A DNA stretch of 62,942 bases, filler included, from Neoconidiobolus thromboides FSU 785 (Eukaryota > Fungi > Entomophthoromycota): NCBI GenBank assembly GCA_025603075.1. It is 8 parts of 8 records of this genome, joined end to end, with 100 filler letters (N's around TTAATTAATTAA, not from the genome) between each part and the next. Parts side by side here need not be neighbours in the genome. Positions count along the whole stretch, not along the records: positions 53,547 to 58,416 come from MU626769.1; 7 more parts are not named here. One strand, written 5' to 3'. A program made the position numbers and the translations under genes. Below the pieces are notes generated by a model. The model was given only the letters and a program-made list of their open reading frames with translations, had not been told where the DNA came from and searched no databases. Every line of letters starts with the position of its first letter. Within the stretch, counting starts at the first letter, position 1. Positions 520-58,416 of this stretch are shown here, piece after piece.

Positions 520-617
520 GGGGATGTATTTCTATATTTAATAATTTCACTAACAATCTTTCCACTTAAATAGTGCTTAAAGGATGGAAAAGTAATGAAG
601 TCAAAAAAAACATCCCC
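520..617. mobile_element. MITE family A copy
   Basis: ATAT-GGGGATGTATTT...AAAAAAAACATCCCC-ATAT; 98 bp. Confidence 0.9.
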
Positions 618-791
618 ATATATTTAATTATGTTATTGTAGTATATTTCCAAATTTAACAATTGTTAATTTTCTAAAAAGCTATAACTTAATTTATAGTA
701 TAATAGTATTTTTTTTAGCTTTGTTGCTTTTTTATTTTTTTTAAATAATTTAAAAAATTCCTAAATACAAAAATATATCTTTATATAATCT

Positions 792-1017
792 GAGGATGTT
801 TCTTTTGACTTCACTTTTTCTATCTTTTAAGCGCTATTTGAGTGGAAAAATTGTTAGTAGAATTCTTAAATATAAAAATACATTCCCATCTAGTATTTTT
901 TTAAAAAGCACTAGCATTGGGAGTATTTTTTTGGCTTCATTACTTTTTTCGTTTTTTAGGCACTATTTAAGCGGAAAATTTGTTAGTAGAATTCTTAAAC
1001 AGGAAAATACATTCCCA
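792..1017. mobile_element. Two tandem MITE A copies
   Basis: Two ~97-bp units with the family core (CTTCA.T.CTTTTTC..TCTTTTAAGCGCTATTTGAGTGGAAAA..TGTTAGTAGAATTCTTAAA). Confidence 0.8.
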
Positions 1018-1230
1018 TTATTTATAAATACTTTTGCATATTTTGAAATAAATAAAGATTTGATTAAGTTATATAAAAAATGCTATAAATTGTAAAATAT
1101 TTATAAAATAATATTAACGTATAAATTAAAAAAATTGAGACATTTATAATTTCAAAATAAAATTTAAAACATTATATAAAACTTCATTAAAACTATATAA
1201 ATACAAAAATTATTTAGCTTTTTTATATAT

Positions 1231-1325
1231 GGGGCTGTTTTTTTAGTTTCATTATTTTTCCATTTTTAAGCGCTATTTGAGTGGAAAGATTGTAGTAAAA
1301 TTCTTAAATAAAAAAACACATCCCC
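1231..1325. mobile_element. MITE family A copy
   Basis: ATAT-GGGGCTGTTTTTT...CACATCCCC-ATAT. Confidence 0.9.
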
Positions 1326-1524
1326 ATATGCTTTATAATTTTTTTATAGCTTTTTGTTTTTAAGCTTTTTTAAATAAATACGGGAATATATTTTTATTTA
1401 AAAGTTTCAATACATTTTATTTAAATTTAAAAACACAAAATTATCTATCATTTTTAAATTCAGGTAAAAAAAATTGATAACAAATTTAAATAAAGATCTC
1501 TGAAACATAATACTATTTAATAAT

Positions 1525-1720
1525 GGGAATGTTTTTTTGATTTCATCACTTTTGGGGGCGTTTTTTTTTGGCTTCATCACTTTTTCCATCTTTTAAGCGC
1601 TATTTAGGCGGAAAAATTAGTAAAACTGTTAGATACAAAAATACATCCCCATTTTTTAAGCACTATTTGAGTGGAAAGACTGTTAGTAAAATCCTTAAAC
1701 AAAAAAATATATCCCCAATA
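1525..1720. mobile_element. Compound MITE A array (truncated and partially duplicated units)
   Basis: A truncated left end, a full unit ending ACATCCCC at ~1650, then a repeated right half ending ATATCCCC at ~1716. Confidence 0.75.
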
Positions 1721-1946
1721 TATATTCGGATTATTTATATGGGGATTTTTTTTTGGTTTTATTACTGAATCTAAAGCGTTGTTAGACCATACTTTGGTTA
1801 TATTGGCATATCAGTGTGTTATAGGGTTTTTTCGTTTATTGTTGGGACGGAAAAAATATATCATGAATTTTAATTAAAACTGGTATAACACTAAATAAAT
1901 ATAAGGCCAGCCAAAAAATAAACTAACTTATCCAAGATAATTATAT

Positions 1947-2042
1947 GGAGATGTTTTTTTTAGCTTCATCGCTTTTTCTATTTCTCAAGCGCTATTTGAG
2001 TAGAAAAGTTAATAAAATTCTTAAACAAAAAAATACATCCCC
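1947..2042. mobile_element. MITE family A copy
   Basis: ATAT-GGAGATGTTTTTT...ATACATCCCC-ATAT. Confidence 0.9.
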
Positions 2043-2763
2043 ATATATATAAAATCCCTAACCCTAATTCCTGATCTTTAACTTTTAACACCAACCTAAT
2101 CTTAATCGATTGTCAATAAAAGAAGTAATATGACAGTGTAAATATTTTAAAAGTTTATTAAAATCCATGTTTTTATAACATTATAGTATATCTTCTTAGC
2201 GCTACGCTAATCTTAATTATAATTCATGGTAACGAATTTTTTTCATCTCAACAATAAAGGGAAAAGCCCCCTAACATACTAAGTGCTAATATAACCTATA
2301 TTTTTGTTTTGATAATAACGTTACTTCTGAGCGGAATTTAATAAAGTAATTTTTAGTAGAAAATATAAAAATCAGTACTACTACTTTAGATGCTATTGTA
2401 TTTAATTTAGCCAGTATTCAATCGTATTTTTATATCGATAGAAACGGTATTTTTTATATTATGATGAAATAATCTTAGATCTTTGCCACATATCTAATCA
2501 TAGTAGTTCAAGTTGGTATTCTATGATTTTCCTGCACTTATCCTCGGAATAATAATTTATAATTAAAATTTAAGAAAAAGGGGGATAAATGAATATGTGG
2601 GTGCTTTAGATTAACACTATGATAGGTCCATTGTTAATTTTAGATTATTTTAGTTTAATTTAATTGGCTATGTATCCCTAAATACAAATTGGAAAGGGAA
2701 AATTAAAAAAATCAAAGTATAAATTAAAATGACAAATTCCTTAAAGGAGTTTTTTATACAATA

Positions 2764-3978
2764 ATGTCTCCACCAGAAACGATTGATAATAGTAGCAAAA
2801 AATTCGATGCAGTACATTCTGAAAACTTGAGCGACAACGGATTTAAAGCAAACGATTTGAGCTATATAACTAGCAATCAGGGTGTTGAATTCTATCATAA
2901 AAACTATACTCCACCAAATTTTACTATAAAGGAGTTACGTGAGAGTATCCCAGCTCATTTATTCAAGCGCTCTACACTTAAGTCTTCTATTCACACATTA
3001 ATTGATTTGTTAATATGCTCCATTTTATTTTATATTGCAACCTACTTTGATACATTTTCATTTGCTATTCAATTGGTTGCATGGCCATTGTACTGGTTTT
3101 TTCAAGGTGTATTCATGACAGGGTTATGGGTTATTGCCCATGAATGTGGCCATCAAGCGTTCTCAGATCATAAGGCCATCAATGACTTTGTTGGATTTGT
3201 ACTACACACTGGACTATTGGTCCCATATCACTCTTGGCGTATTTCTCATGCTCGTCATCACGCTCACACTGGTCATTTACATGAAGATCAAGTGTTTGTA
3301 CCAATTAGAAGAAGCGAGCATAATAAACTATATGATACAATAAATGAATCAGTTGAAACAGCTCCAATCTACTCCATTTTACGTGTAGTTAGAATCTTAT
3401 TATTTGGATGGCCCGCTTACCTTATATGGAATGCCTCTGGACAACCTTATAAGCAATATACTTCTCACTTTCACCCAACATCTCCAATATTTCGCCCACA
3501 TCAAGCATTTAAAGTTTTATATTCAGATGCTGGATTGATAGTAGCATTTTCTGTATTAGCTTACTTCATTAAGACTACTTCCTTTTGGACAGTAGCCAAA
3601 TATTATCTAATCCCTTACATCAATGTTAATGCTTGGTTGGTAACAATTACCTTTTTACAACACACTGATGTTTATATTCCTCATTACGACCCAAAGGAAT
3701 GGAATTTTGTCAGAGGTGCCTTGACTACTGTTGATCGTGACTTTGGTTGGTTTCTTAATATTGCTCTTCATCATATTAATGATTCACATGTTGCACATCA
3801 TTTGTTCTCTCAAATGCCCTTCTATAATGCAATTGAAGCAACTAAATATCTTAAGGCCAAATTGGGTCAATATTATCTTTACGATAGGACCCCTCTTCAT
3901 TTATCCCTCTATAGATCTGCAAGAAATTGTTTGTTTATTGAAGATGAAGGGGATGTTTTATTTTATAAATCAAAGTAA
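2764..3978 (+). CDS. FAD2: Delta-12 (omega-6) fatty acid desaturase, intronless, 404 aa
   Basis: Three histidine boxes HECGH, HARHH and HVAHH, plus TFLQHTD and GALTTVDRDFG, typical of FAD2-type desaturases. Confidence 0.93.
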   Translation: MSPPETIDNSSKKFDAVHSENLSDNGFKANDLSYITSNQGVEFYHKNYTPPNFTIKELRESIPAHLFKRSTLKSSIHTLIDLLICSILFYIATYFDTFSFAIQLVAWPLYWFFQGVFMTGLWVIAHECGHQAFSDHKAINDFVGFVLHTGLLVPYHSWRISHARHHAHTGHLHEDQVFVPIRRSEHNKLYDTINESVETAPIYSILRVVRILLFGWPAYLIWNASGQPYKQYTSHFHPTSPIFRPHQAFKVLYSDAGLIVAFSVLAYFIKTTSFWTVAKYYLIPYINVNAWLVTITFLQHTDVYIPHYDPKEWNFVRGALTTVDRDFGWFLNIALHHINDSHVAHHLFSQMPFYNAIEATKYLKAKLGQYYLYDRTPLHLSLYRSARNCLFIEDEGDVLFYKSK

Positions 3979-4705
3979 AATATAATAAAATAGATTGAGT
4001 TTTAAACGTTGATGGCTTTTATTCGAATATTTATTTTTAAAAAATTGATTCTATAAGTCGAAACATTCCTTTAAAACCTTCACATTTGGTTTATAATGTA
4101 TTATCAAGGATCTCCAGATCTTGTTGCAGTTTGAAAATTAAAATAAACTAGCAATTCAAATCCTCAATCATTATAAATCACCAATTAATACAATAGTATA
4201 TATACATCTGCTTAACGTTAAAGGGTTTATTTCAGGATTTTATTGAGCATATAAATAGATTAATCATTCAACTATAGTTTGATACTTAAAATTTTAACTA
4301 TCATTTATATAAATGTTTAAGAATACAAAAAGGATATGATGAGCTTAGTAGCTTTTATAACACTGAGAGTTAGTACATTTTATTTTCAATTCCCAACATG
4401 GATTTAAATTTAGTGCATCTTGTAAAAATTAATAGTGTGAATATAAGAAAGATATAAATACTCAAACTACTCTAAAACAATGGCTTGTCATTTTTGATTT
4501 ATAATTTGATGAGAAAATTACAAATATTACATTAAAACCAACTCAGAAACATAACATTTGATTAACGATGCTTAAAATTACACTAAGATATAGGGTTTGC
4601 TTTATTATTTTTTTAAAATATTTGTTTTCGTCATAACTCGAAAAAAATAGAAATACTAAAAATATTTAAATTCTTTCATTAGTGTAGACATAAAAAATAA
4701 CATAT

Positions 4706-4804
4706 GGGAATGTTTTTTTTGACTTTATTACTTTTTCCATTTTTTAAGCGCTATTTAAGTGGAAAATTTGTTAGTAAAATTCTTAAACGTAAAAATACAT
4801 CCCC
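4706..4804. mobile_element. MITE family A copy
   Basis: ATAT-GGGAATGTTTTT...ATACATCCCC-ATAT. Confidence 0.9.
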
Positions 4805-5265
4805 ATATATAATATTCTTATTAGTTTAGATTCAGCTTTCTCAATATTCAAACTCAAAACAAATATACATCAATGCCTTTTATTATCTTTAAAGTTGATT
4901 AGCACTTTAAAGCTTTATAATGAATAAAGAATGGAAAAATTGTAAAGCAAAAGGTGTCCACGTATTGCTCAATTGAAATGTATACTGATGCTTCTTCAGA
5001 AATTTGCTACCTATCTATTTATGATGCAGTTAAACAATTTTATTATTATAGTTTTTATTACATTATAATACTATAAGCTTTACTTTTCCCATTATCCTAA
5101 AAATGAATATTAAATATCTAACGATGTTTTTCAAGATTTTTGATTCAAGCAATAATTTACTAAGCTTTAAGCTTAAAAAATAAGAAAACACTTGTTAAAA
5201 ACCAAAGCATTCCTATAAATAAATTTGATAAATAGCAAGATTTGAAGTTGAATTAAATTTTTATA

Positions 5266-6331
5266 TTAAGGTTTGGTAGTTCCTGAAAGAGCTTCTTGCG
5301 CTTTTAATCTACGTTGTTCTGCAATATATTCTTTAAATTGATCTCCACCGAAAACCATACAAACCTAAAAATCAAATCTAAATAAACTATAAAAAGTAAA
5401 AATTTAGAGCTTACTGTAAGATAAACACCTAAGCAAATACGAGGTGTGACCCCTCTGTAAAACCCTAACAATCCGTTTTGCTGATAAATATATTTAGCAG
5501 TGGTGAAAATGTTCAAATTTTCTGGACGGCCAGGTGCTTTTGCCTGAGATTGCATTTCAACACGAATTACTTCAATAGGTTGGTTCCAGCAAGCAAGGGC
5601 TCCACCAACAACGGAAGATAAAATTCTCTCCCCATTTGTAAGTTTACGTTCACTATTTCCTTTTAATCCACGCTCTACGAGACGTGAAATACCAAACCGA
5701 GAACCCCAATTAGTCATCTGACGAATAGCAACAGCAGAAACCCCTTTATTTAATCCACGAATACCCTCTTTTTGGAATACTTCATAAGCTACTTTCCAAG
5801 TAGATTTTGGTGCTGCACCGACTTCTTTATGTCTAGTTACCTCTACAGTTTTCATAAAAGTACAAAAACCCATAGTGGTATATGCTTGTGCAATGCCACC
5901 CCCCATTCCTCCCAAAAGCCCAGAAGCAGCAGAAGATAATCCATAAGATCTTGCATGGTAGTCAATTTCGCTTGAAGCAAACATGAGTACGCCACCTTTA
6001 GTAGAGGCTTCAATCCATGCCCACTTTAATCAAAATTATAGTTAATATATTTAAAATAATAAAATAAAGTACCGGAATCAAACCTTGCCAGAAACCCTTA
6101 ATACCTCCACGAGCGTAAGTTTTGCTTATTGATTGAAGTATACTATCACCACGATGAGCTATATATGTTAAAAAAAAATAATTGAATTATGTAAAAATTA
6201 CCAGCCATATGAGTTTTAATTACTTCAAATGGTTGACCTAAAGTGGAAACTTCAAATGTTTGTATAAACCCACCAATAAATATATTTTCCCAGGATATAG
6301 GCTTCTTCTTGATTTGAGTCTTAGTAGTCAT
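5266..6331 (-). CDS. YHM2: Mitochondrial carrier, YHM2-type citrate/oxoglutarate carrier; exons 6331-6202, 6158-6073, 6023-5415, 5364-5266
   Basis: Spliced product contains [38 protein letters not shown] and WNQPIEVIRVEMQ. All introns are GT-AG and the frame is preserved. Confidence 0.88.
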
Positions 6332-6769
6332 GCTAAGTAATGGTTTAATGAAATAAAAGTTTATATTGTAGTGTATATTATACCTTTTTATAATCTTTAA
6401 AAGATATTTTAACACATCATTTTTATTTCGAATATTGTATTAATTTGTGGTCAAATTTAGCCAATGATTTTGGTTGTGATTAGTCAGAGTCAATGACAAC
6501 CAATTAGATCTAAACGTATCCTTACTTTTACATAGTTCATTATTTATATACTATTTTTATCAATTATTTAATCCATGCTACCCTTAGGAATAATAAGATA
6601 ATGTTAAATTATTCTCAAATATAAGTAAGATTGTTATAAAAATATTTGGATAAATTTGAAAACTTTGTCAAAAGTAAAAACCTAACTTTACAATCTATAT
6701 TAAAATTTGTATAACCAAGTATGAGAATGCTTCGTTTGATTCCATTAATTTGCTCATTTTTACATATAG

Positions 6770-53546: not shown

Positions 53547-53606
53547 AAATGGGGTATTAATGGAGATTGTGATTGGGGTAGCTGTTGCTGTGGTGCCGAT
53601 TGTTAA
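53547..53606 (+). CDS. 10-Cys secreted peptide, copy 1 (3' end only, after gap)
   Basis: KWGINGDCDWGSCCCGADC* identical in DNA to 57009-57068, but with its own 3' flank. Confidence 0.85.
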   Translation, partial: KWGINGDCDWGSCCCGADC

Positions 53607-54004
53607 ACTCATGAAATGATATACTGGCTTATTTTACTGAAATATTAAACACAATTTTTATCAAAATAAGCATTTTTATTAATAGTTACAATATCTACTT
53701 TATATTAACAGTTGTAATCTATAAAATAATCTTTGCAACTTTAGAGTTTTAAATTATTTTTGTTTATTTCACAAATCTATTATTTAAATGGTTATAATTC
53801 AATATCTACATATCACTGTTATATTTAACATTTAAACTGTTAAATGGATTTCTAACAATCAAATCAAACTATTATAATTAATTCTTTATTACTTTGAATA
53901 GCATTTCTTTACTACAACTTCCTAACATATAAACCATTCCAAATTTTAGAAAGGTTACATTATCAAAATATTTTGAAAGTAGTTGATATAAGAATGCACC
54001 AAAT

Positions 54005-54482
54005 GGGAGTGTTTTTTTTGACTTCATTATTTTTTCCATTTTTTGAGCGCTATTTAAGCGGAAAATTTGTTAGTAAAATTCTTAGACACAAAAATACATC
54101 CCCAAATACTTTAATTTAACTATGCCAAATAAACCTTTCATTAAATTATAAATTTTATATTTCAATTTTAACTCATCAACTTATAATAAGTTATATTTGA
54201 TACTCTGATTATTCTAAGGTAACTACTATCCTCAATGTCTATCTTGATATTTTCATCGATATCACCTAGAAAAATCCAGTTTGTCTTCAAGTAAATAAGT
54301 TACTAAATAACATCCTAATGCAATTCTCTATTATGACTAAAGCATATTTTCCAAAGCAAAAACCTTCTGTTTTACTTTATTAATATATGGGGGTGTTTTT
54401 TTGGCTTCATTACTTTTTCTATCTTTTAAACAGTATTTAAGCGGAAAAATAGTAAGATTCTTAAATATGAAGATACATCTCC
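54005..54482. mobile_element. Two MITE A copies (~54005-54102, 54389-54482) in the peptide-array spacer
   Basis: Family core and termini. Confidence 0.85.
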
Positions 54483-54715
54483 ATCATAAATTGAATCATT
54501 ATAAGGTTTAGTTAGATATACTATTAGTACTATTGTCTTTGTAATATTTCGCAACGTTTATTACTATTTCCTTTGTCCATACGACTAAATTACATTCAGT
54601 AAGAGTCAACTATGACATGAAGTGTTACATCATGGAATATTGCAAAACTTAGTAGTAGAGATAAATAAAGCAATTGAAGAAATTGATGGTTTAAACGTTG
54701 AATTTAAAAATCAAG

Positions 54716-54856
54716 TACCATTGGTTCGATTTAAACATGAATTGGGCATTTTAGTTCTTGTATTTACTGAACTAAACTATAAGGAAATTTCTTTATTTTT
54801 ATTTAACAAATACGAAGCAAAAATGCCCAATTCACGTTTAAATCGAACCAATGGTA
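54716..54856. repeat. Long hairpin / TA-flanked inverted-repeat element (second MITE-like family or structured RNA)
   Basis: TACCATTGGTTCGATTTAAACATGAATTGGGCATTTT pairs with AAAATGCCCAATTCACGTTTAAATCGAACCAATGGTA (36 of 37 Watson-Crick); TA at both ends. Confidence 0.85.
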
Positions 54857-55053
54857 AGGTTAGTATTTTAATCAACACTAACATTACTTTATTATCGTAA
54901 ATTATACAATTAAAGTTAGTTTTAGTTATAAAATTACCTTATGAATATATGATGTAGCAGTTGAATTAACCCTAAACATAAAGGTGTTAGCATTATCATT
55001 TAACCCTAAAGATCAAACTGTCACCATCTCATTGTTTACTCTTAAAAAAATAG

Positions 55054-55169
55054 TATAAATAATACACAAAAGTAGCTATAAAATTTATTAAATACTCCTT
55101 TTATTCCTGTATAAAGTAACTATAATCATCAGAGCTTAAACACAATATATTAACATCTATTTCCTTTAG
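55054..55169 (+). promoter_or_regulatory. TATA box and probable 5'-UTR intron of peptide copy 2
   Basis: TATAAATA 126 nt before the ATG; GTAACT(55116)...TTAAC...TTTAG(55169). The same layout occurs at copies 3 and 4. Confidence 0.6.
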
Positions 55170-55179
55170 AATATTTAAA

Positions 55180-55395
55180 ATGTTTACCAATTTCAAATTA
55201 TTATTAGTTCTCTTTTTCGTCTTTTTTGTAACCTCTGATATCTGCAGAAGATGTAATAAAAAAGGTGCTGTAGGCAGAACTTGTATTGCTGACTATGAGT
55301 GCGGAAATGCTTGCTCTAACTTCCCTAGAAGTCCAAAATGGGGTATTAATGGAGATTGTGATTGGGGTAGCTGTTGCTGTGGTGCCGATTGCTAA
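55180..55395 (+). CDS. Secreted 10-Cys defensin-like (CS-alpha-beta) peptide, copy 2
   Basis: 19-aa signal ending VTS; 52-aa mature peptide C-x2-C-x9-C-x5-C-x3-C-x14-C-x4-CCC-x3-C. Confidence 0.9.
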   Translation: MFTNFKLLLVLFFVFFVTSDICRRCNKKGAVGRTCIADYECGNACSNFPRSPKWGINGDCDWGSCCCGADC

Positions 55396-56479
55396 GCACA
55401 TACGATGATATTTGATTAATTTTCTATATTATAGCATTATAAGTATGTGAATCTATTTCATTGAAGTAATAAACATAACCTCATTAAACTAAACGCTTTT
55501 TATGCTACTAAATACACTAATAATTTACAATGATACCCAGTAGCTTTGATTTTACAATTTATTGATTTATAAGGGCTCACGACTATTTACTTATCAATTA
55601 GCAAATGTTTAATACCTAAATATTAATATTAATATTTTTATAGTTGATCGAGTATCTAAACTACTATAATAAAATTTTTTAATAAATATAATTTATTATA
55701 AATCATCTCAATATTATTTTAAATAGTGTTACTTTATGCTTTAATACTAACTAGCTAATAAGTTGCTATAGGTTTACCAACAAAAAGTATACTATTGGAA
55801 GAATAAAGATAATAAATAGAAAGCGAGAAGTTTCAGTCTATTCAAGCTATAGCCTCAAAGACATTTTTTATTACATTGTACGCTATACGCTACATATTTT
55901 AAAAAAAGTCATTTAACCATAATGAATTAGACTTACTATCTTGGAAAAGAGTAGCATACAAGGTGGTGATTACTTTAAATCTAGAAACAGTATTGACAAT
56001 TGATTAAAACATTCATAAGTCTGAGGATAATACAGGCTATAGAATAATAGATGAGAATGCCATTCTTCATAAATAATTCATGCTTTTAAAAATGACGGAC
56101 CCTTTGGCCCTTGATTTTTGATTACTCATGTTACTTTCCCATTTATTATATTTTAATAATATTATTATAAAAGAATTATGTTTCAGCTATCATTACTTTC
56201 CACCCATCTCCAAATCATAATAGAAAGCAACATGCTATTTATGGATTATTGCATCAGGAATATTGTAATTTAGTTAAACAGGAATTTATAAGTAGATAAA
56301 TGACAAAACAAGTACCAAAGTATGAACCAAACTATAAATAGTAAAGAAAATAAAATTATAAATTGGAATGCCTTTAATGTTTCAATATCCAGCTAACTTT
56401 TAACTCTATGTTGTATAAAAATGGATAAATAAATTAAATCTAAAAAGACCTAACATCCTCTTTTACTATTGCAAACTGT

Positions 56480-56580
56480 GCGAGGACGTTTTTTTTGGTT
56501 TCATTACTTTTTCCATTTTTTTAAGCGTTGTTTGAGCGGAAATATTGTTGGTAAATTCTTAAATACAAAAGTACACCCCT
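56480..56580. mobile_element. MITE family A copy, diverged, in the peptide-array spacer
   Basis: GAGGACGTTTTTT...GTACACCCCT with family core. Confidence 0.75.
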
Positions 56581-56852
56581 ATATATATAATTTTGTTGGA
56601 AAAATTATTTCATAAAATGCATGATATAGCGTATAATTTAGCCTTAAACATCAAATACATCAACACTAACATTTAACCTTAAACTACAAGCTATCGTTAC
56701 TTAATTGTTTGTCTTTAAAAAAGAGTATAAATAGCTCATAGAAGCAACCATAAGCCTTATCAAATTCATAATTTAATACTGTATAAAGTAGACATTTAAA
56801 AATCCAACTTTAAATATAAATATTAATAACTATTTCCTTTAGAATATTTAAA

Positions 56853-57068
56853 ATGTTTACCAATTTCAAATTATTATTAGTTCTCTTTTTCGTCTTTTTT
56901 GTAACCTCTGATATCTGCAGAAGATGTAATAAAAAAGGTGCTGTAGGCAGAACTTGTGTTGCTGATCACGAATGTGGAAATGCTTGCTCTAACTTCCCTA
57001 GAAGTCCAAAATGGGGTATTAATGGAGATTGTGATTGGGGTAGCTGTTGCTGTGGTGCCGATTGTTAA
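56853..57068 (+). CDS. Secreted 10-Cys defensin-like peptide, copy 3
   Basis: Identical to copy 2 except for two substitutions, I>V and Y>H (IADYEC vs VADHEC). Confidence 0.9.
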   Translation: MFTNFKLLLVLFFVFFVTSDICRRCNKKGAVGRTCVADHECGNACSNFPRSPKWGINGDCDWGSCCCGADC

Positions 57069-57600
57069 GCTTATAAGATAATATATTTTTTTATTTTAGT
57101 ATTTTGAATTACTATTATAAATGATATTGATTCAACACTGACCTGTTAGATTAGCATTTCTATTAAAATAAAATAAAAGTGATTTTCAAATCTTTAATAT
57201 TCGTTCTTATCCTTTGATTCTATCTAAATACAGTATTAGTAGCTATTGATGGTAATAACTTATTGTAACAATATTCCTATACTTTTAAATTTGAAAATTA
57301 GCTATCTTAGCAAAAGTATATTATTACTTCAGGTGCTATATCAAAATGTTATTAAAAATAAAATTCTAAATTTAGTTTTTATTTTAAATGCACAACATCC
57401 AAGGAATTGTAATTTGGAATTGTAAGGATATTTGTTAAAATAAAAACCGATTTATTAATATAGCCAATAATCCTTACTTTATCATTATACTTTAGTTAGC
57501 TAAAAATACCGATTTTTGCCAGCAGTATAACAAATAACTTTAAAATAACTTTTCTAGTATATTTTATCATAATTAGCGTATAATAATGGAATTGATATAT

Positions 57601-57698
57601 GAGGATGTGCTTTTATGTTTAAGAATTTTACTATAGATTTTTCTACTCGAATAGTGCTTGAAAGATAGAAAAAGTAATGAAGCCAAAAAAACATCCCC
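57601..57698. mobile_element. MITE family A copy in the peptide-array spacer
   Basis: ATAT-GAGGATGTG...AAAACATCCCC-ATAT. Confidence 0.9.
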
Positions 57699-58357
57699 AT
57701 ATAATTTACCTTACTATTACTCAAAAAATGTAATTTTACAATAATATATAAAATTAATTATAATATATGTATTCATTGATTAGTTTAATTGAACGGCTTT
57801 TTTTAAAATACTTTAATTCGATTGTCGCTTACTTTCTTTATTGATCGACCAGATTGTAATGAACTAAATTGGATTATCTCATGGTTGACTCCACTAATCA
57901 ATACTGGCGTCAAAAACAAGGGTGTAAATCATCCTTGTTATTACGTTAGAAATTTCATTAAGCTTGAATTAATTAAATAAAATGACAAATATAAATCCTA
58001 TCACACTATCTTATAGTTCATAACTGCTCATCACTTTATTTATTGTCATAATTAAATAACAGTAGGTGTTGAAGCATGATTTTACAATAGTTTTATTACC
58101 CTTACAGCTTCAAAAAATGAATTATTATATCAGTTGACTTAAATAACATAACAAAACTTGTCATGGTGTGGCTTTGCATCAAGTTTGAACGTTAAAACTG
58201 TCAAAGTTGATCGTCTATCCCTGAAAAAATAATATAAATAATGTATAGAAGTAGATATCAAATTCATTAAATCCAATTGTATTATTGTATAAGGTAATCA
58301 TTTAGTTTTATGATTTAGTGTTAAATATTAATAACTATTTCCTTTAGAATATTTAAA

Positions 58358-58416
58358 ATGTTTACCAATTTCAAATTATTATTAGTTCTCTTTTTCGTCT
58401 TTTTTGTAACCTCTGA
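58358..58416 (+). CDS. 10-Cys secreted peptide, copy 4 (5' end only, cut by gap)
   Basis: MFTNFKLLLVLFFVFFVTSD DNA identical to copies 2 and 3, with its own upstream flank; TATAAATA at 58233. Confidence 0.85.

What the first reader, a model, noticed from the sequence alone, without database searches (positions are those of the whole stretch)
53547..58416. Tandem array of at least 4 genes for a five-disulfide defensin-like secreted peptide (top candidate for an undescribed system)
Seen: copies about 1.5-1.8 kb apart, same strand, each with distinct flanks; the array runs into gaps at both ends. The mature peptide DICRRCNKKGAVGRTC(I/V)AD(Y/H)ECGNACSNFPRSPKWGINGDCDWGSCCCGADC has Cys at 3, 6, 16, 22, 26, 41, 46, 47, 48 and 52. 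Knowledge: dropping C3 and C47 leaves C-x9-C-x5-C-x3-C-x14-C-x4-C-x-C-x3-C. That is the eight-cysteine CS-alpha-beta pattern of plant defensins and drosomycin, with a gamma-core GxC-x4-C. Classical fungal defensins such as plectasin have six cysteines. Inference: C3-C47 form a fifth bond, and the long SNFPRSPKWGIN loop is a family-specific binding surface. Net charge is only about +1 (7 K/R vs 6 D/E), which fits a receptor, channel or enzyme ligand (toxin or effector) better than a membrane-lytic cationic peptide. Dosage amplification suggests high demand.
Basis: partly seen in the sequence, partly recalled or inferred. Interest (0 to 1): 0.85.

Follow-up and report, generated by a model that had tools for sequence, protein, structure and literature searches.

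The report
Tandem fungal ten-cysteine defensin-like genes
A small contig of the soil and aphid fungus Neoconidiobolus thromboides carries a tandem array of short genes for a secreted ten-cysteine peptide that is most likely a new, unnamed branch of the well-known defensin (cysteine-stabilised alpha-beta) superfamily: a modest novelty, not a new kind of system.

Summary
The piece is a whole 4,870-bp contig of Neoconidiobolus thromboides FSU 785. It has two complete intronless 71-aa ORFs (55180-55395, 56853-57068) and two copies cut by the contig ends, 1.5-1.8 kb apart on one strand. Each encodes a signal peptide plus a 52-aa peptide with ten invariant Cys.

At least four more paralogues lie on two other contigs. 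Three identical copies sit in Lobosporangium transversale (Mortierellomycota), and two relatives come from metagenomes. The public annotation wrongly splices neighbouring copies into 122-124-aa chimeras.

The copies are under purifying selection (5-8 synonymous versus 0-2 non-synonymous changes). RNA-like runs show very high depth over the genes.

Pfam has no match. For four of five family members and both profiles, the best solved-structure hit is a CS-alpha-beta protein aligned end to end (E 0.01-1.1). These hits are plant defensins Sd5 and gamma-thionins, and scorpion alpha-KTx toxins. AlphaFold2 models were poor (pLDDT 59-64), so the fold is inferred, not shown.

Plant-defensin alignments place C3 at defensin C1. 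The acidic GDC core and a homologue in a non-entomopathogenic saprobe weaken the toxin reading.

Verdict: a new variant of a known kind.

The parts
53547..53606 (+). 3' end of a type-A gene copy cut by the left contig edge (codes KWGINGDCDWGSCCCGADC and the stop codon)
   Evidence: (repeat family D3)
55040..55179 (+). Conserved upstream region of copy A1. It has a TATA-like GTATAAATA about 125 nt before the ATG, a conserved AAG/GTAA about 70 nt before it, and TTTCCTTTAG/AATATTTAAA directly before it (possible 5'-UTR intron; inference)
   Evidence: (D4, D2)
55180..55395 (+). Complete gene copy A1, single exon, 71 aa. Signal peptide 55180-55236, mature 52-aa ten-Cys peptide 55237-55392 (Ile17, Tyr20), stop 55393-55395
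56712..56852 (+). Conserved upstream region of copy A2 (same motifs as for A1)
56853..57068 (+). Complete gene copy A2, single exon, 71 aa. Mature peptide 56910-57065 (Val17, His20). It differs from A1 by 5 synonymous and 2 non-synonymous changes in the mature part
58219..58357 (+). Conserved upstream region of the truncated right-hand copy
58358..58416 (+). 5' end of a further type-A copy (signal peptide MFTNFKLLLVLFFVFFVTS) cut by the right contig edge
   Evidence: D2, D7
55367..56880 (+). The 1,514-nt 'intron' (GT..AG) of the public gene model K502DRAFT_353865 (P0001, 124 aa). It joins copy A1 after ..CDW to copy A2 at VLFF.. and is judged a mis-annotation that fuses two genes
   Evidence: The single-exon 68-72-aa architecture is the one shared by P0003, P0004 and P0007

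Best explanation
The contig is part of a multi-copy locus of Neoconidiobolus thromboides. Each unit is a short intronless gene with its own conserved promoter-proximal region. Each gene encodes a 19-21-aa signal peptide followed directly, with no propeptide, by a 49-52-aa peptide with ten invariant cysteines.

The peptide is most likely a cis-defensin (cysteine-stabilised alpha-beta fold) of the plant-defensin/drosomycin eight-Cys type. On that reading the helix carries C22-x3-C26, which bonds C46 and C48 of the last strand. C16 bonds C41 of the G-x-C core. An N-terminal Cys, most likely C3, bonds the C-terminal C52. One extra bond, probably C6-C47, lies across the outer face of the sheet.

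The peptide is secreted in quantity. Many near-identical copies are kept by purifying selection, and RNA-like depth over the genes is high. It most plausibly acts as a target-binding (not membrane-lytic) antimicrobial or competition factor in soil and cadaver habitats.

Shown here: gene structure, copy number, conservation, selection, family distribution and the sequence-level link to CS-alpha-beta proteins. Inferred: the fold, the disulfide map, secretion and the biological activity.
For: Anatomy and array. Organism and mis-fused public models. Paralogues B, C and D on two other contigs. Three identical copies in Lobosporangium transversale, inside 98-100% identical segmental duplications. 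Metagenome relatives. All ten Cys plus I2, R4, R5, D19, N24, N38, G39, D40, D42, W43 and G49 are invariant. Every member has a hydrophobic leader ending in a small residue at -1 and -3 just before (D/S)ICRRC.

Purifying selection: A1/A2 show 5 synonymous versus 2 non-synonymous changes, A1/A3 8 versus 2, A2/A3 3 versus 0. Type B versus Lobosporangium has saturated synonymous sites (pS 0.84) but dN of 0.137. The CDS is about 97% identical between copies, upstream regions about 71%, and the rest of the spacers cannot be aligned.

Link to CS-alpha-beta: profile hits to sugarcane defensin 5 at E 0.0099 and 0.014, covering the whole peptide. [quoted passage not shown] P0007 hits Sd5. P0004 hits scorpion alpha-KTx 4.2 and Ts kappa at E 0.11-0.15 with all six core Cys in register. 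The Pfam Gamma-thionin hit has E 0.37. The Cys spacing meets the published plant-defensin rule C3-x3-C4, C6-x-C7, C7-x3-C8 (PMC7432377). Language-model neighbours are drosomycin-like, gamma-thionin, termicin and scorpion short toxins. AlphaFold2 puts a helix on the CxxxC segment.

Expression: in runs X9, X4 and X7 the unique spacers are absent or at depth 0-66, while contigs over the CDS reach 575-6,469.
Against: No confident structure was obtained. AlphaFold2 gave pLDDT 64 and 59, drew the C-terminal CCC segment as helical rather than as a strand, and found no match in Foldseek/PDB, VIA-align or the ESM Atlas. Every sequence hit to a CS-alpha-beta protein is individually weak (E 0.01-5.7) and partly driven by Cys. 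The window's own type-A peptide gives no such hit by itself. Pfam's Gamma-thionin cut-off is not reached (11.5 versus 25.1 bits). The x of the C-x-C motif is itself Cys, which published definitions exclude (PMC5234102). The gamma-core is acidic, not cationic. The 'RNA' label of runs X4, X7 and X9 is a guess by the tool. No activity data exist.
Confidence: 0.7

Rival explanations
1. The peptide is a toxin or effector aimed at animals (insect hosts, nematodes, amoebae), acting on an ion channel, receptor or enzyme.
For: N. thromboides can infect aphids (own knowledge; PMC9409958 listed). The type-C paralogue's best PDB hits are scorpion potassium-channel toxins. The nearest named language-model clusters for the mature peptide are scorpion short toxins. 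Net charge is near zero. Some plant defensins inhibit insect alpha-amylase (PMC7432377).
Against: The pore-plugging Lys of the G-K-C / KCXN toxin signature (PMC5116183) is replaced by an invariant Asp (G-D-C-D-W). An 86%-identical peptide is triplicated in Lobosporangium transversale, a soil saprobe not known as an animal pathogen. The mature sequence has been conserved across two fungal phyla under strong purifying selection, unlike typical fast-evolving host-directed effectors.
Confidence: 0.15
2. The peptide has a different, possibly new, disulfide-rich fold, and the resemblance to defensins is only a coincidence of Cys spacing.
For: AlphaFold2 did not produce a CS-alpha-beta model and drew residues 43-48 as helix. 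No structural match was found in any library. There is no Pfam membership. All sequence hits are weak, and language-model scores are 0.80-0.82, below the level the tool calls reliable.
Against: The models have low confidence, so they argue neither way. Four of five family members and both profiles pick CS-alpha-beta proteins as the top hit out of 177,635 PDB sequences, in end-to-end, Cys-registered alignments. The CxxxC, GxC, CxC and x3-C elements occur in the canonical order and spacing.
Confidence: 0.2
3. The peptide is an endogenous signal or a structural or developmental factor (for example spore- or wall-associated, or regulating the fungus's own growth), not a weapon.
For: Near-identity of the mature peptide across phyla suggests a conserved partner. 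Some fungal defensin-like peptides have lost antibacterial activity and affect the producer's fitness (anisin-1, pechrysin; PMC5234102). The core is anionic.
Against: The family has a very patchy distribution: two genomes and a few metagenome contigs among billions of proteins. That fits an accessory trait better than a core developmental function. Multi-copy amplification and diversification of the two loops among paralogues are typical of defence peptides.
Confidence: 0.1
4. The array is an assembly artefact or a set of decaying pseudogenes.
For: The contig is short and both ends break inside copies. The public annotation is chimeric.
Against: All complete copies have intact ORFs and a dN/dS of 0.05-0.08. 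The spacers are unique and were recovered in an independent DNA data set. Homologues with the same architecture exist in other organisms.
Confidence: 0.02

Closest known systems
Plant defensins / gamma-thionins (Pfam PF00304; e.g. wheat gamma-1-P thionin 1GPS, barley gamma-1-H thionin 1GPT, sugarcane Sd5 2KSK)
   Same: Signal peptide followed directly by a peptide of about 50 aa. Shares the C1..C2-x5-C3-x3-C4..G-x-C5..C6-x-C7-x3-C8 framework, a G-x-C before the helix, and an N-terminal I-C-R-R identical to the gamma-thionins. These are the top PDB hits. Net charges of +1 are common (PMC7432377).
   Different: Found in fungi, not plants. It has ten Cys, with the extra ones at position 6 and in the middle of C-x-C (giving CCC). 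The loop between helix and strand 2 is longer (14 residues). The gamma-core is acidic (N-G-D-C-D-W) rather than cationic. It falls below the Pfam threshold (11.5 versus 25.1 bits).
Petunia PhD1/PhD2 five-disulfide plant defensins
   Same: Ten Cys with a fifth disulfide added to an unchanged defensin scaffold (PMC7432377).
   Different: In PhD1 the extra Cys lie between C1-C2 and between C2-C3 (loop to helix). Here they lie three residues after C1 and between C6 and C7, so the fifth bond is not homologous.
Classical fungal defensins (plectasin, micasin, eurocin; malpisin clusters of Mortierella alpina)
   Same: Secreted fungal CS-alpha-beta peptides. They are often near-neutral or anionic, and are encoded in clusters expanded by gene duplication in Mortierellomycota (PMC4165938; AfusinC, PMC6181372, listed).
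   Different: Those have six Cys, are 33-48 aa long, lack the C1-C8-type terminal bond, and often carry propeptides and introns. No sequence similarity to them was detected in any search here.
Drosomycin-type antifungal peptides
   Same: Eight-Cys C1-C10-type framework. The nearest language-model cluster is 'drosomycin-like' (score 0.80).
   Different: Reported from plants and ecdysozoans (PMC9751787; PMC5116183). No significant sequence match here, and two fewer Cys.
Scorpion short-chain toxins (alpha-KTx 4.2 6ATL, Ts kappa 1TSK; chlorotoxin-like Toxin_5)
   Same: The six core Cys align in register, including G-x-C-x4-C-x-C. These are the nearest named language-model clusters for the mature part.
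   Different: The functional Lys of G-K-C is an invariant Asp. The peptide also has longer N- and C-terminal extensions with four more Cys, and it comes from a fungus.

Membership tests
Cis-defensin / CS-alpha-beta superfamily | Cystine framework C..C-x3-C..C..C-x-C in that order (PMC5234102) | tested here: met
   C16, C22-x3-C26, C41 and C46-x-C48 are invariant in all eight sequences. One deviation: the x is itself Cys.
Cis-defensin / CS-alpha-beta superfamily | Three-dimensional fold: an alpha-helix pinned by two disulfides to the last strand of a three-stranded antiparallel sheet | tested here: inconclusive
   Two AlphaFold2 runs gave pLDDT 64.4 and 58.7. A helix was predicted on residues 19-28, but the C-terminus was drawn as helix. 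Foldseek PDB, VIA-align wide and the ESM Atlas gave no usable match.
Cis-defensin / CS-alpha-beta superfamily | Disulfide connectivity (CxxxC to CxC, parallel pair) | not testable with these tools
   Needs MS mapping or a solved structure.
Cis-defensin / CS-alpha-beta superfamily | Gamma-core G-x-C-x3-9-C, usually cationic | tested here: inconclusive
   The motif G39-D40-C41-x4-C46 is present and invariant, but its net charge is negative, contrary to criterion 3 quoted in PMC7432377.
Plant defensin / Gamma-thionin (PF00304) | Eight Cys with conserved spacings C3-x3-C4, C6-x-C7, C7-x3-C8 and a C1-C8 terminal bond | tested here: met
   The spacings are met with C3 (or C6) as C1 and C52 as C8. 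The bond itself was not tested.
Plant defensin / Gamma-thionin (PF00304) | Score above the Pfam gathering threshold | tested here: not met
   The best of 8 members was P0005 at 11.5 bits, E 0.37, against a cut-off of 25.1. The other seven gave no hit.
Plant defensin / Gamma-thionin (PF00304) | Detectable sequence homology to solved members | tested here: inconclusive
   Top PDB hits are Sd5 (E 0.0099, 0.014, 1.1) and the gamma-1-P and gamma-1-H thionins (E 0.87, 5.7), aligned end to end. These are borderline, and the window's own peptide gives none.
Classical six-Cys fungal defensins (plectasin type) | Six Cys, 33-48 aa, sequence similarity to plectasin or ancient invertebrate-type defensins | tested here: not met
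   The peptide has ten Cys and 49-52 aa. No fungal defensin appeared among hits in PDB, Pfam or the protein databases.
Scorpion alpha-KTx potassium-channel toxins | Short n-loop and the pore-plugging Lys in G-K-C / KCXN (PMC5116183) | tested here: not met

The most novel reading that the evidence does not exclude
This may be a native fungal lineage of plant-type (C1-C8-bonded) cis-defensins in early-diverging fungi. It would carry a previously unseen fifth disulfide that uses the middle Cys of a CCC triplet, and an invariant acidic core (I-C-R-R ... N-G-D-C-D-W). The mature peptide is 82-86% identical between Entomophthoromycotina and Mortierellomycota even though synonymous sites are saturated. 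That implies either a very specific, conserved molecular target unlike the cationic lipid-binding mode of plant defensins, or an ancient transfer between fungal phyla.
Probability: 0.3. Interest if true: 0.6.

Novelty: new variant of a known kind. Interest (0 to 1): 0.45.

Why it matters
Fungal defensins such as plectasin are drug leads, and nearly all described ones have six Cys. A ten-Cys, plant-defensin-framed family in zygomycete fungi would extend the known range of the eight-Cys 'plant/insect' framework. It would add a new way of cross-bracing the scaffold, and give a very stable small peptide with an unusual acidic core to test for a new target. Its near-identity across two phyla bears on how such peptides spread (vertical retention with loss, or transfer). 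On the practical side, the public annotation of this genome fuses neighbouring copies into false two-domain proteins. Small single-exon genes of this kind are probably under-called in other fungal genomes.

Tried and rejected
- **Pfam, full precursors and mature peptides:** no family, apart from one sub-threshold Gamma-thionin hit.
- **PDB sequence search with the window's own precursor and mature peptide:** only spurious hits (a tubulin gamma-complex repeat, RBM22, DnaJ zinc finger).
- **AlphaFold2:** run twice, once with type A first and once with the Lobosporangium peptide first. Both models had low confidence.
- **Fold searches with the better model:** Foldseek/PDB gave 0 hits, VIA-align against 48,161 chains gave no Z of 2 or more, and the ESM Atlas gave TM 0.35-0.39 to unrelated proteins. 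These are uninformative because the model is poor.
- **Protein database searches:** three word-index searches and one exhaustive HMMER search over 1.8 billion representatives found no members beyond N. thromboides, L. transversale and three metagenome contigs.
- **Contig scans:** GTDB bacterial and archaeal genomes and JGI metagenome contigs gave nothing. The metagenome collection evidently lacks even the known contig L002, whose sequence fits the pattern, so that blank means little.
- **Family tree:** unresolved, with no starred branch.
- **Rfam and tRNA scans of the piece:** nothing.
- **Recent horizontal transfer between the two fungi:** rejected. Synonymous sites are saturated and GC3 matches each host (0.23-0.31 versus 0.54).
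- **Metallothionein or zinc-finger reading of the CxxC/CCC motifs:** considered and set aside, because every member has a signal peptide and aromatic or hydrophobic core residues.

Full report
**What is there**

The piece 53547-58416 is AT-rich (GC 22-29%). It equals a whole 4,870-bp contig of Neoconidiobolus thromboides FSU 785 (Entomophthoromycotina). The database protein K502DRAFT_353865, whose longest contig is 4,870 bp, matches the first ORF at 100% identity.

The + strand carries two complete 71-aa ORFs, 55180-55395 and 56853-57068. The last 19 codons plus stop of a further copy sit at the left edge (53547-53606). The first 19 codons of another copy sit at the right edge (58358-58416). 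Start-to-start spacings are 1789, 1673 and 1505 nt.

Only two copies are complete, and the two edge fragments may belong to one or two more genes.

**Gene structure and annotation**

Each ORF encodes a hydrophobic leader (MFTNFKLLLVLFFVFFVTS). The leader ends with small residues at -3 and -1 and is followed directly by DICRRC. All relatives end their quite different leaders at the same point, so there is no propeptide.

The public models P0001 (124 aa) and P0002 (122 aa) are chimeras. P0001 joins copy A1 after ..CDW to copy A2 at VLFF.. through a GT..AG 'intron' at 55367-56880. The first half of such a product would lack the last four Cys. The architecture shared by every other family member is a single exon of 68-72 aa. 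I therefore read the fusions as mis-annotation.

The roughly 140 nt upstream of each ATG is conserved among all eight N. thromboides paralogues. It has GTATAAATA at about -125, AAG/GTAA at about -70, and TTTCCTTTAG/AATATTTAAA just before the ATG. The last two look like the splice sites of a short 5'-UTR intron. That is inference only.

**Family census**

N. thromboides has further genes.
- The start of the 148-kb contig MU626289.1 carries one more type A and two identical type B genes (L001).
- MU626741.1 carries types C and D (L003).

This gives at least eight genes of four types. Outside this species the searches found only three sources:
- three identical 70-aa genes within 5 kb in Lobosporangium transversale (Mortierellomycota), lying in 98-100% identical segmental duplications;
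- a 72-aa gene on an AT-rich metagenome contig (P0003, GC 23%);
- a relative on two 42-43% GC metagenome contigs, which probably has an intron before the mature part (P0005).

An exhaustive HMMER pass over 1.8 billion representatives and three indexed searches of 5.8 billion proteins found nothing else. Genes this small are easily missed by annotation, so absence elsewhere is not established.

**Conservation and selection**

All ten Cys are invariant, as are I2, R4, R5, D19, N24, N38, G39, D40, D42, W43 and G49. Variation is concentrated in residues 7-15 and 27-37.

Among type-A copies, changes in the mature part are mostly silent. A1/A2 show 5 synonymous versus 2 non-synonymous changes, A1/A3 8 versus 2, and A2/A3 3 versus 0, giving dN/dS of 0.05-0.08. 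The CDS is about 97% identical between copies and the upstream region about 71%. The rest of the spacers share only a dispersed ~100-nt repeat. These are functional genes kept alike by selection and perhaps gene conversion.

Type B and the Lobosporangium peptide are 86% identical in the mature part. Synonymous sites between them are saturated (pS 0.84, dN 0.137), and GC3 matches each host (0.23 versus 0.54). The similarity therefore reflects long-term constraint or an ancient transfer, not a recent one. Amplification happened independently in the two fungi.

**Is it real and expressed?**

DNA contigs of an independent study (X2) cover all 30 bins, including every spacer, with few differences. 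Bins over the gene have 5-10 times the flank depth, which is consistent with more type-A-like copies than are assembled.

In three runs that the tool guesses to be RNA (X9 with the same species label; X4 and X7 from a close relative), most unique spacers are absent or at depth 0-66. Contigs over the coding region reach 575-6,469. That pattern is what an abundant mRNA would give. However, these are contigs and the RNA label is unverified.

**Fold**

Pfam gives no family. The profile of the family hits sugarcane defensin 5 (2KSK) as the best of 177,635 PDB sequences, at E 0.0099 and 0.014, aligned over the whole peptide.

Single members give:
- P0005: gamma-1-P and gamma-1-H thionin (E 0.87 and 5.7), with an identical N-terminal I-C-R-R, plus Pfam Gamma-thionin at E 0.37;
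- P0007: Sd5, E 1.1;
- P0004: scorpion alpha-KTx 4.2 and Ts kappa (E 0.11 and 0.15), with all six core Cys in register, including G-x-C-x4-C-x-C;
- the window's own type A: nothing relevant.

Language-model neighbours are all CS-alpha-beta families, but at scores of 0.80-0.82, which the tool rates as leads only. They are drosomycin-like, gamma-thionin, termicin, and the scorpion families Toxin_5, Toxin_2 and Toxin_3.

The spacing satisfies the published plant-defensin rule C3-x3-C4, C6-x-C7, C7-x3-C8 (PMC7432377). Each item is weak, but together they point one way.

AlphaFold2 did not settle it. Two models had pLDDT of 64 and 59, a helix on the CxxxC segment and an unconvincing C-terminus, and no fold-library match. 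I put the CS-alpha-beta fold at about 0.75-0.8. It remains inferred, not shown.

**The fifth bond**

Every plant-defensin alignment instead places C3 at defensin C1, inside I-C-R-R, as in the gamma-thionins. In the short-loop types, C3-x9-C is also a more usual C1-C2 spacing than C6-x6-C.

That makes C6 and C47 the additional pair. On a defensin scaffold both would lie on the sheet face away from the helix, on neighbouring antiparallel strands, which is geometrically plausible (inference). The assignment is not decided.

A Cys in the middle of C-x-C is outside the published ten-Cys reference array (PMC5116183). It also differs from the fifth bond of Petunia PhD1 (PMC7432377).

**Function**

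Nothing here tests activity. Several antifungal plant defensins have +1 net charge (table in PMC7432377), and anionic fungal defensins with antibacterial activity are known (AfusinC, PMC6181372, listed).

The potassium-channel toxin signature is absent, because the pore Lys of G-K-C is an invariant Asp. A near-identical peptide in L. transversale, a soil saprobe, argues against an insect-specific role.

The invariant acidic N-G-D-C-D-W next to the invariant R-R suggests a defined binding site, or a metal- or salt-bridge-stabilised core, rather than a cationic membrane-active surface. The two variable loops are the likely specificity determinants.

My best guess is a secreted, target-binding antimicrobial or competition peptide, at about 0.45 for that specific role. 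An animal-directed toxin (0.15) and an endogenous role (0.1) are the alternatives.

**Novelty**

No paper found mentions this family.

Clustered, duplicated defensin genes in Mortierellomycota are already known: the six-Cys malpisins (PMC4165938). Five-disulfide defensins are known in plants. This is therefore a new variant within a known superfamily, not a new system. Three features are unusual for secreted small proteins of zygomycetes, which a survey found are rarely shared between subphyla (PMC9391592):
- the plant-type framework in early-diverging fungi;
- the CCC-based extra bond;
- the cross-phylum near-identity.

Noticed in passing
window 54003-54108 (+), 54382-54484 (+), 56484-56590 (+), 57595-57705 (-); also L001 1-110: A ~100-nt element with 12-nt terminal inverted repeats (ATATGGGGATGT ... 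ACATCCCCATAT), 82% mean column identity among five copies. It looks like a MITE. Summed contig depth over it is about 5,000 times the single-copy level in a DNA run, and it is also abundant in the RNA-like runs. Contig MU626289.1 begins inside a copy, so the element probably causes assembly breaks.
   Followed up: partly
window 54716-54856: A near-perfect palindrome: 37-nt arms, 97% complementary, with a 67-nt loop, in the first spacer. It lies inside a 92-aa ORF (54622-54900) that is probably not a gene. It may be a foldback or another small transposon.
   Followed up: no
window 55367-56880; L001 4217-5841 and 885-1206: Three public gene models of this genome (K502DRAFT_353865, _363735, _363734) all use the same AG acceptor inside the signal-peptide codons (TTATTATTAG/TT). 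It joins either the previous copy or an upstream pseudo-exon. This looks like a systematic annotation error for this family.
   Followed up: partly
window 55108-55179, 56780-56852, 58287-58357 and the paralogues in L001 and L003: A conserved AAG/GTAA about 70 nt upstream and TTTCCTTTAG immediately before AATATTTAAAATG, in all eight paralogues. This may be a short 5'-UTR intron shared by the family.
   Followed up: partly
L006 4790-10446 (Lobosporangium transversale MCFF01000003.1): Three identical 70-aa homologues, one inverted and two direct 2,333 nt apart, sit in 98-100% identical duplicated blocks of 700-1,100 nt. They lie between an AMP-binding enzyme gene and an RRP36 gene. This is a recent local amplification, independent of the one in N. 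thromboides.
   Followed up: partly
L004 335-721 and L005 125-511 (metagenome contigs, GC 42-43%): The 128-aa prokaryote-style gene call P0005 is probably a eukaryotic gene with an intron. The sequence ..CTCGCAG/GAG precedes the mature peptide, and the upstream 'protein' has no signal-peptide character. The source organism is unknown, and its loop 27-37 is unrelated to the rest of the family.
   Followed up: no
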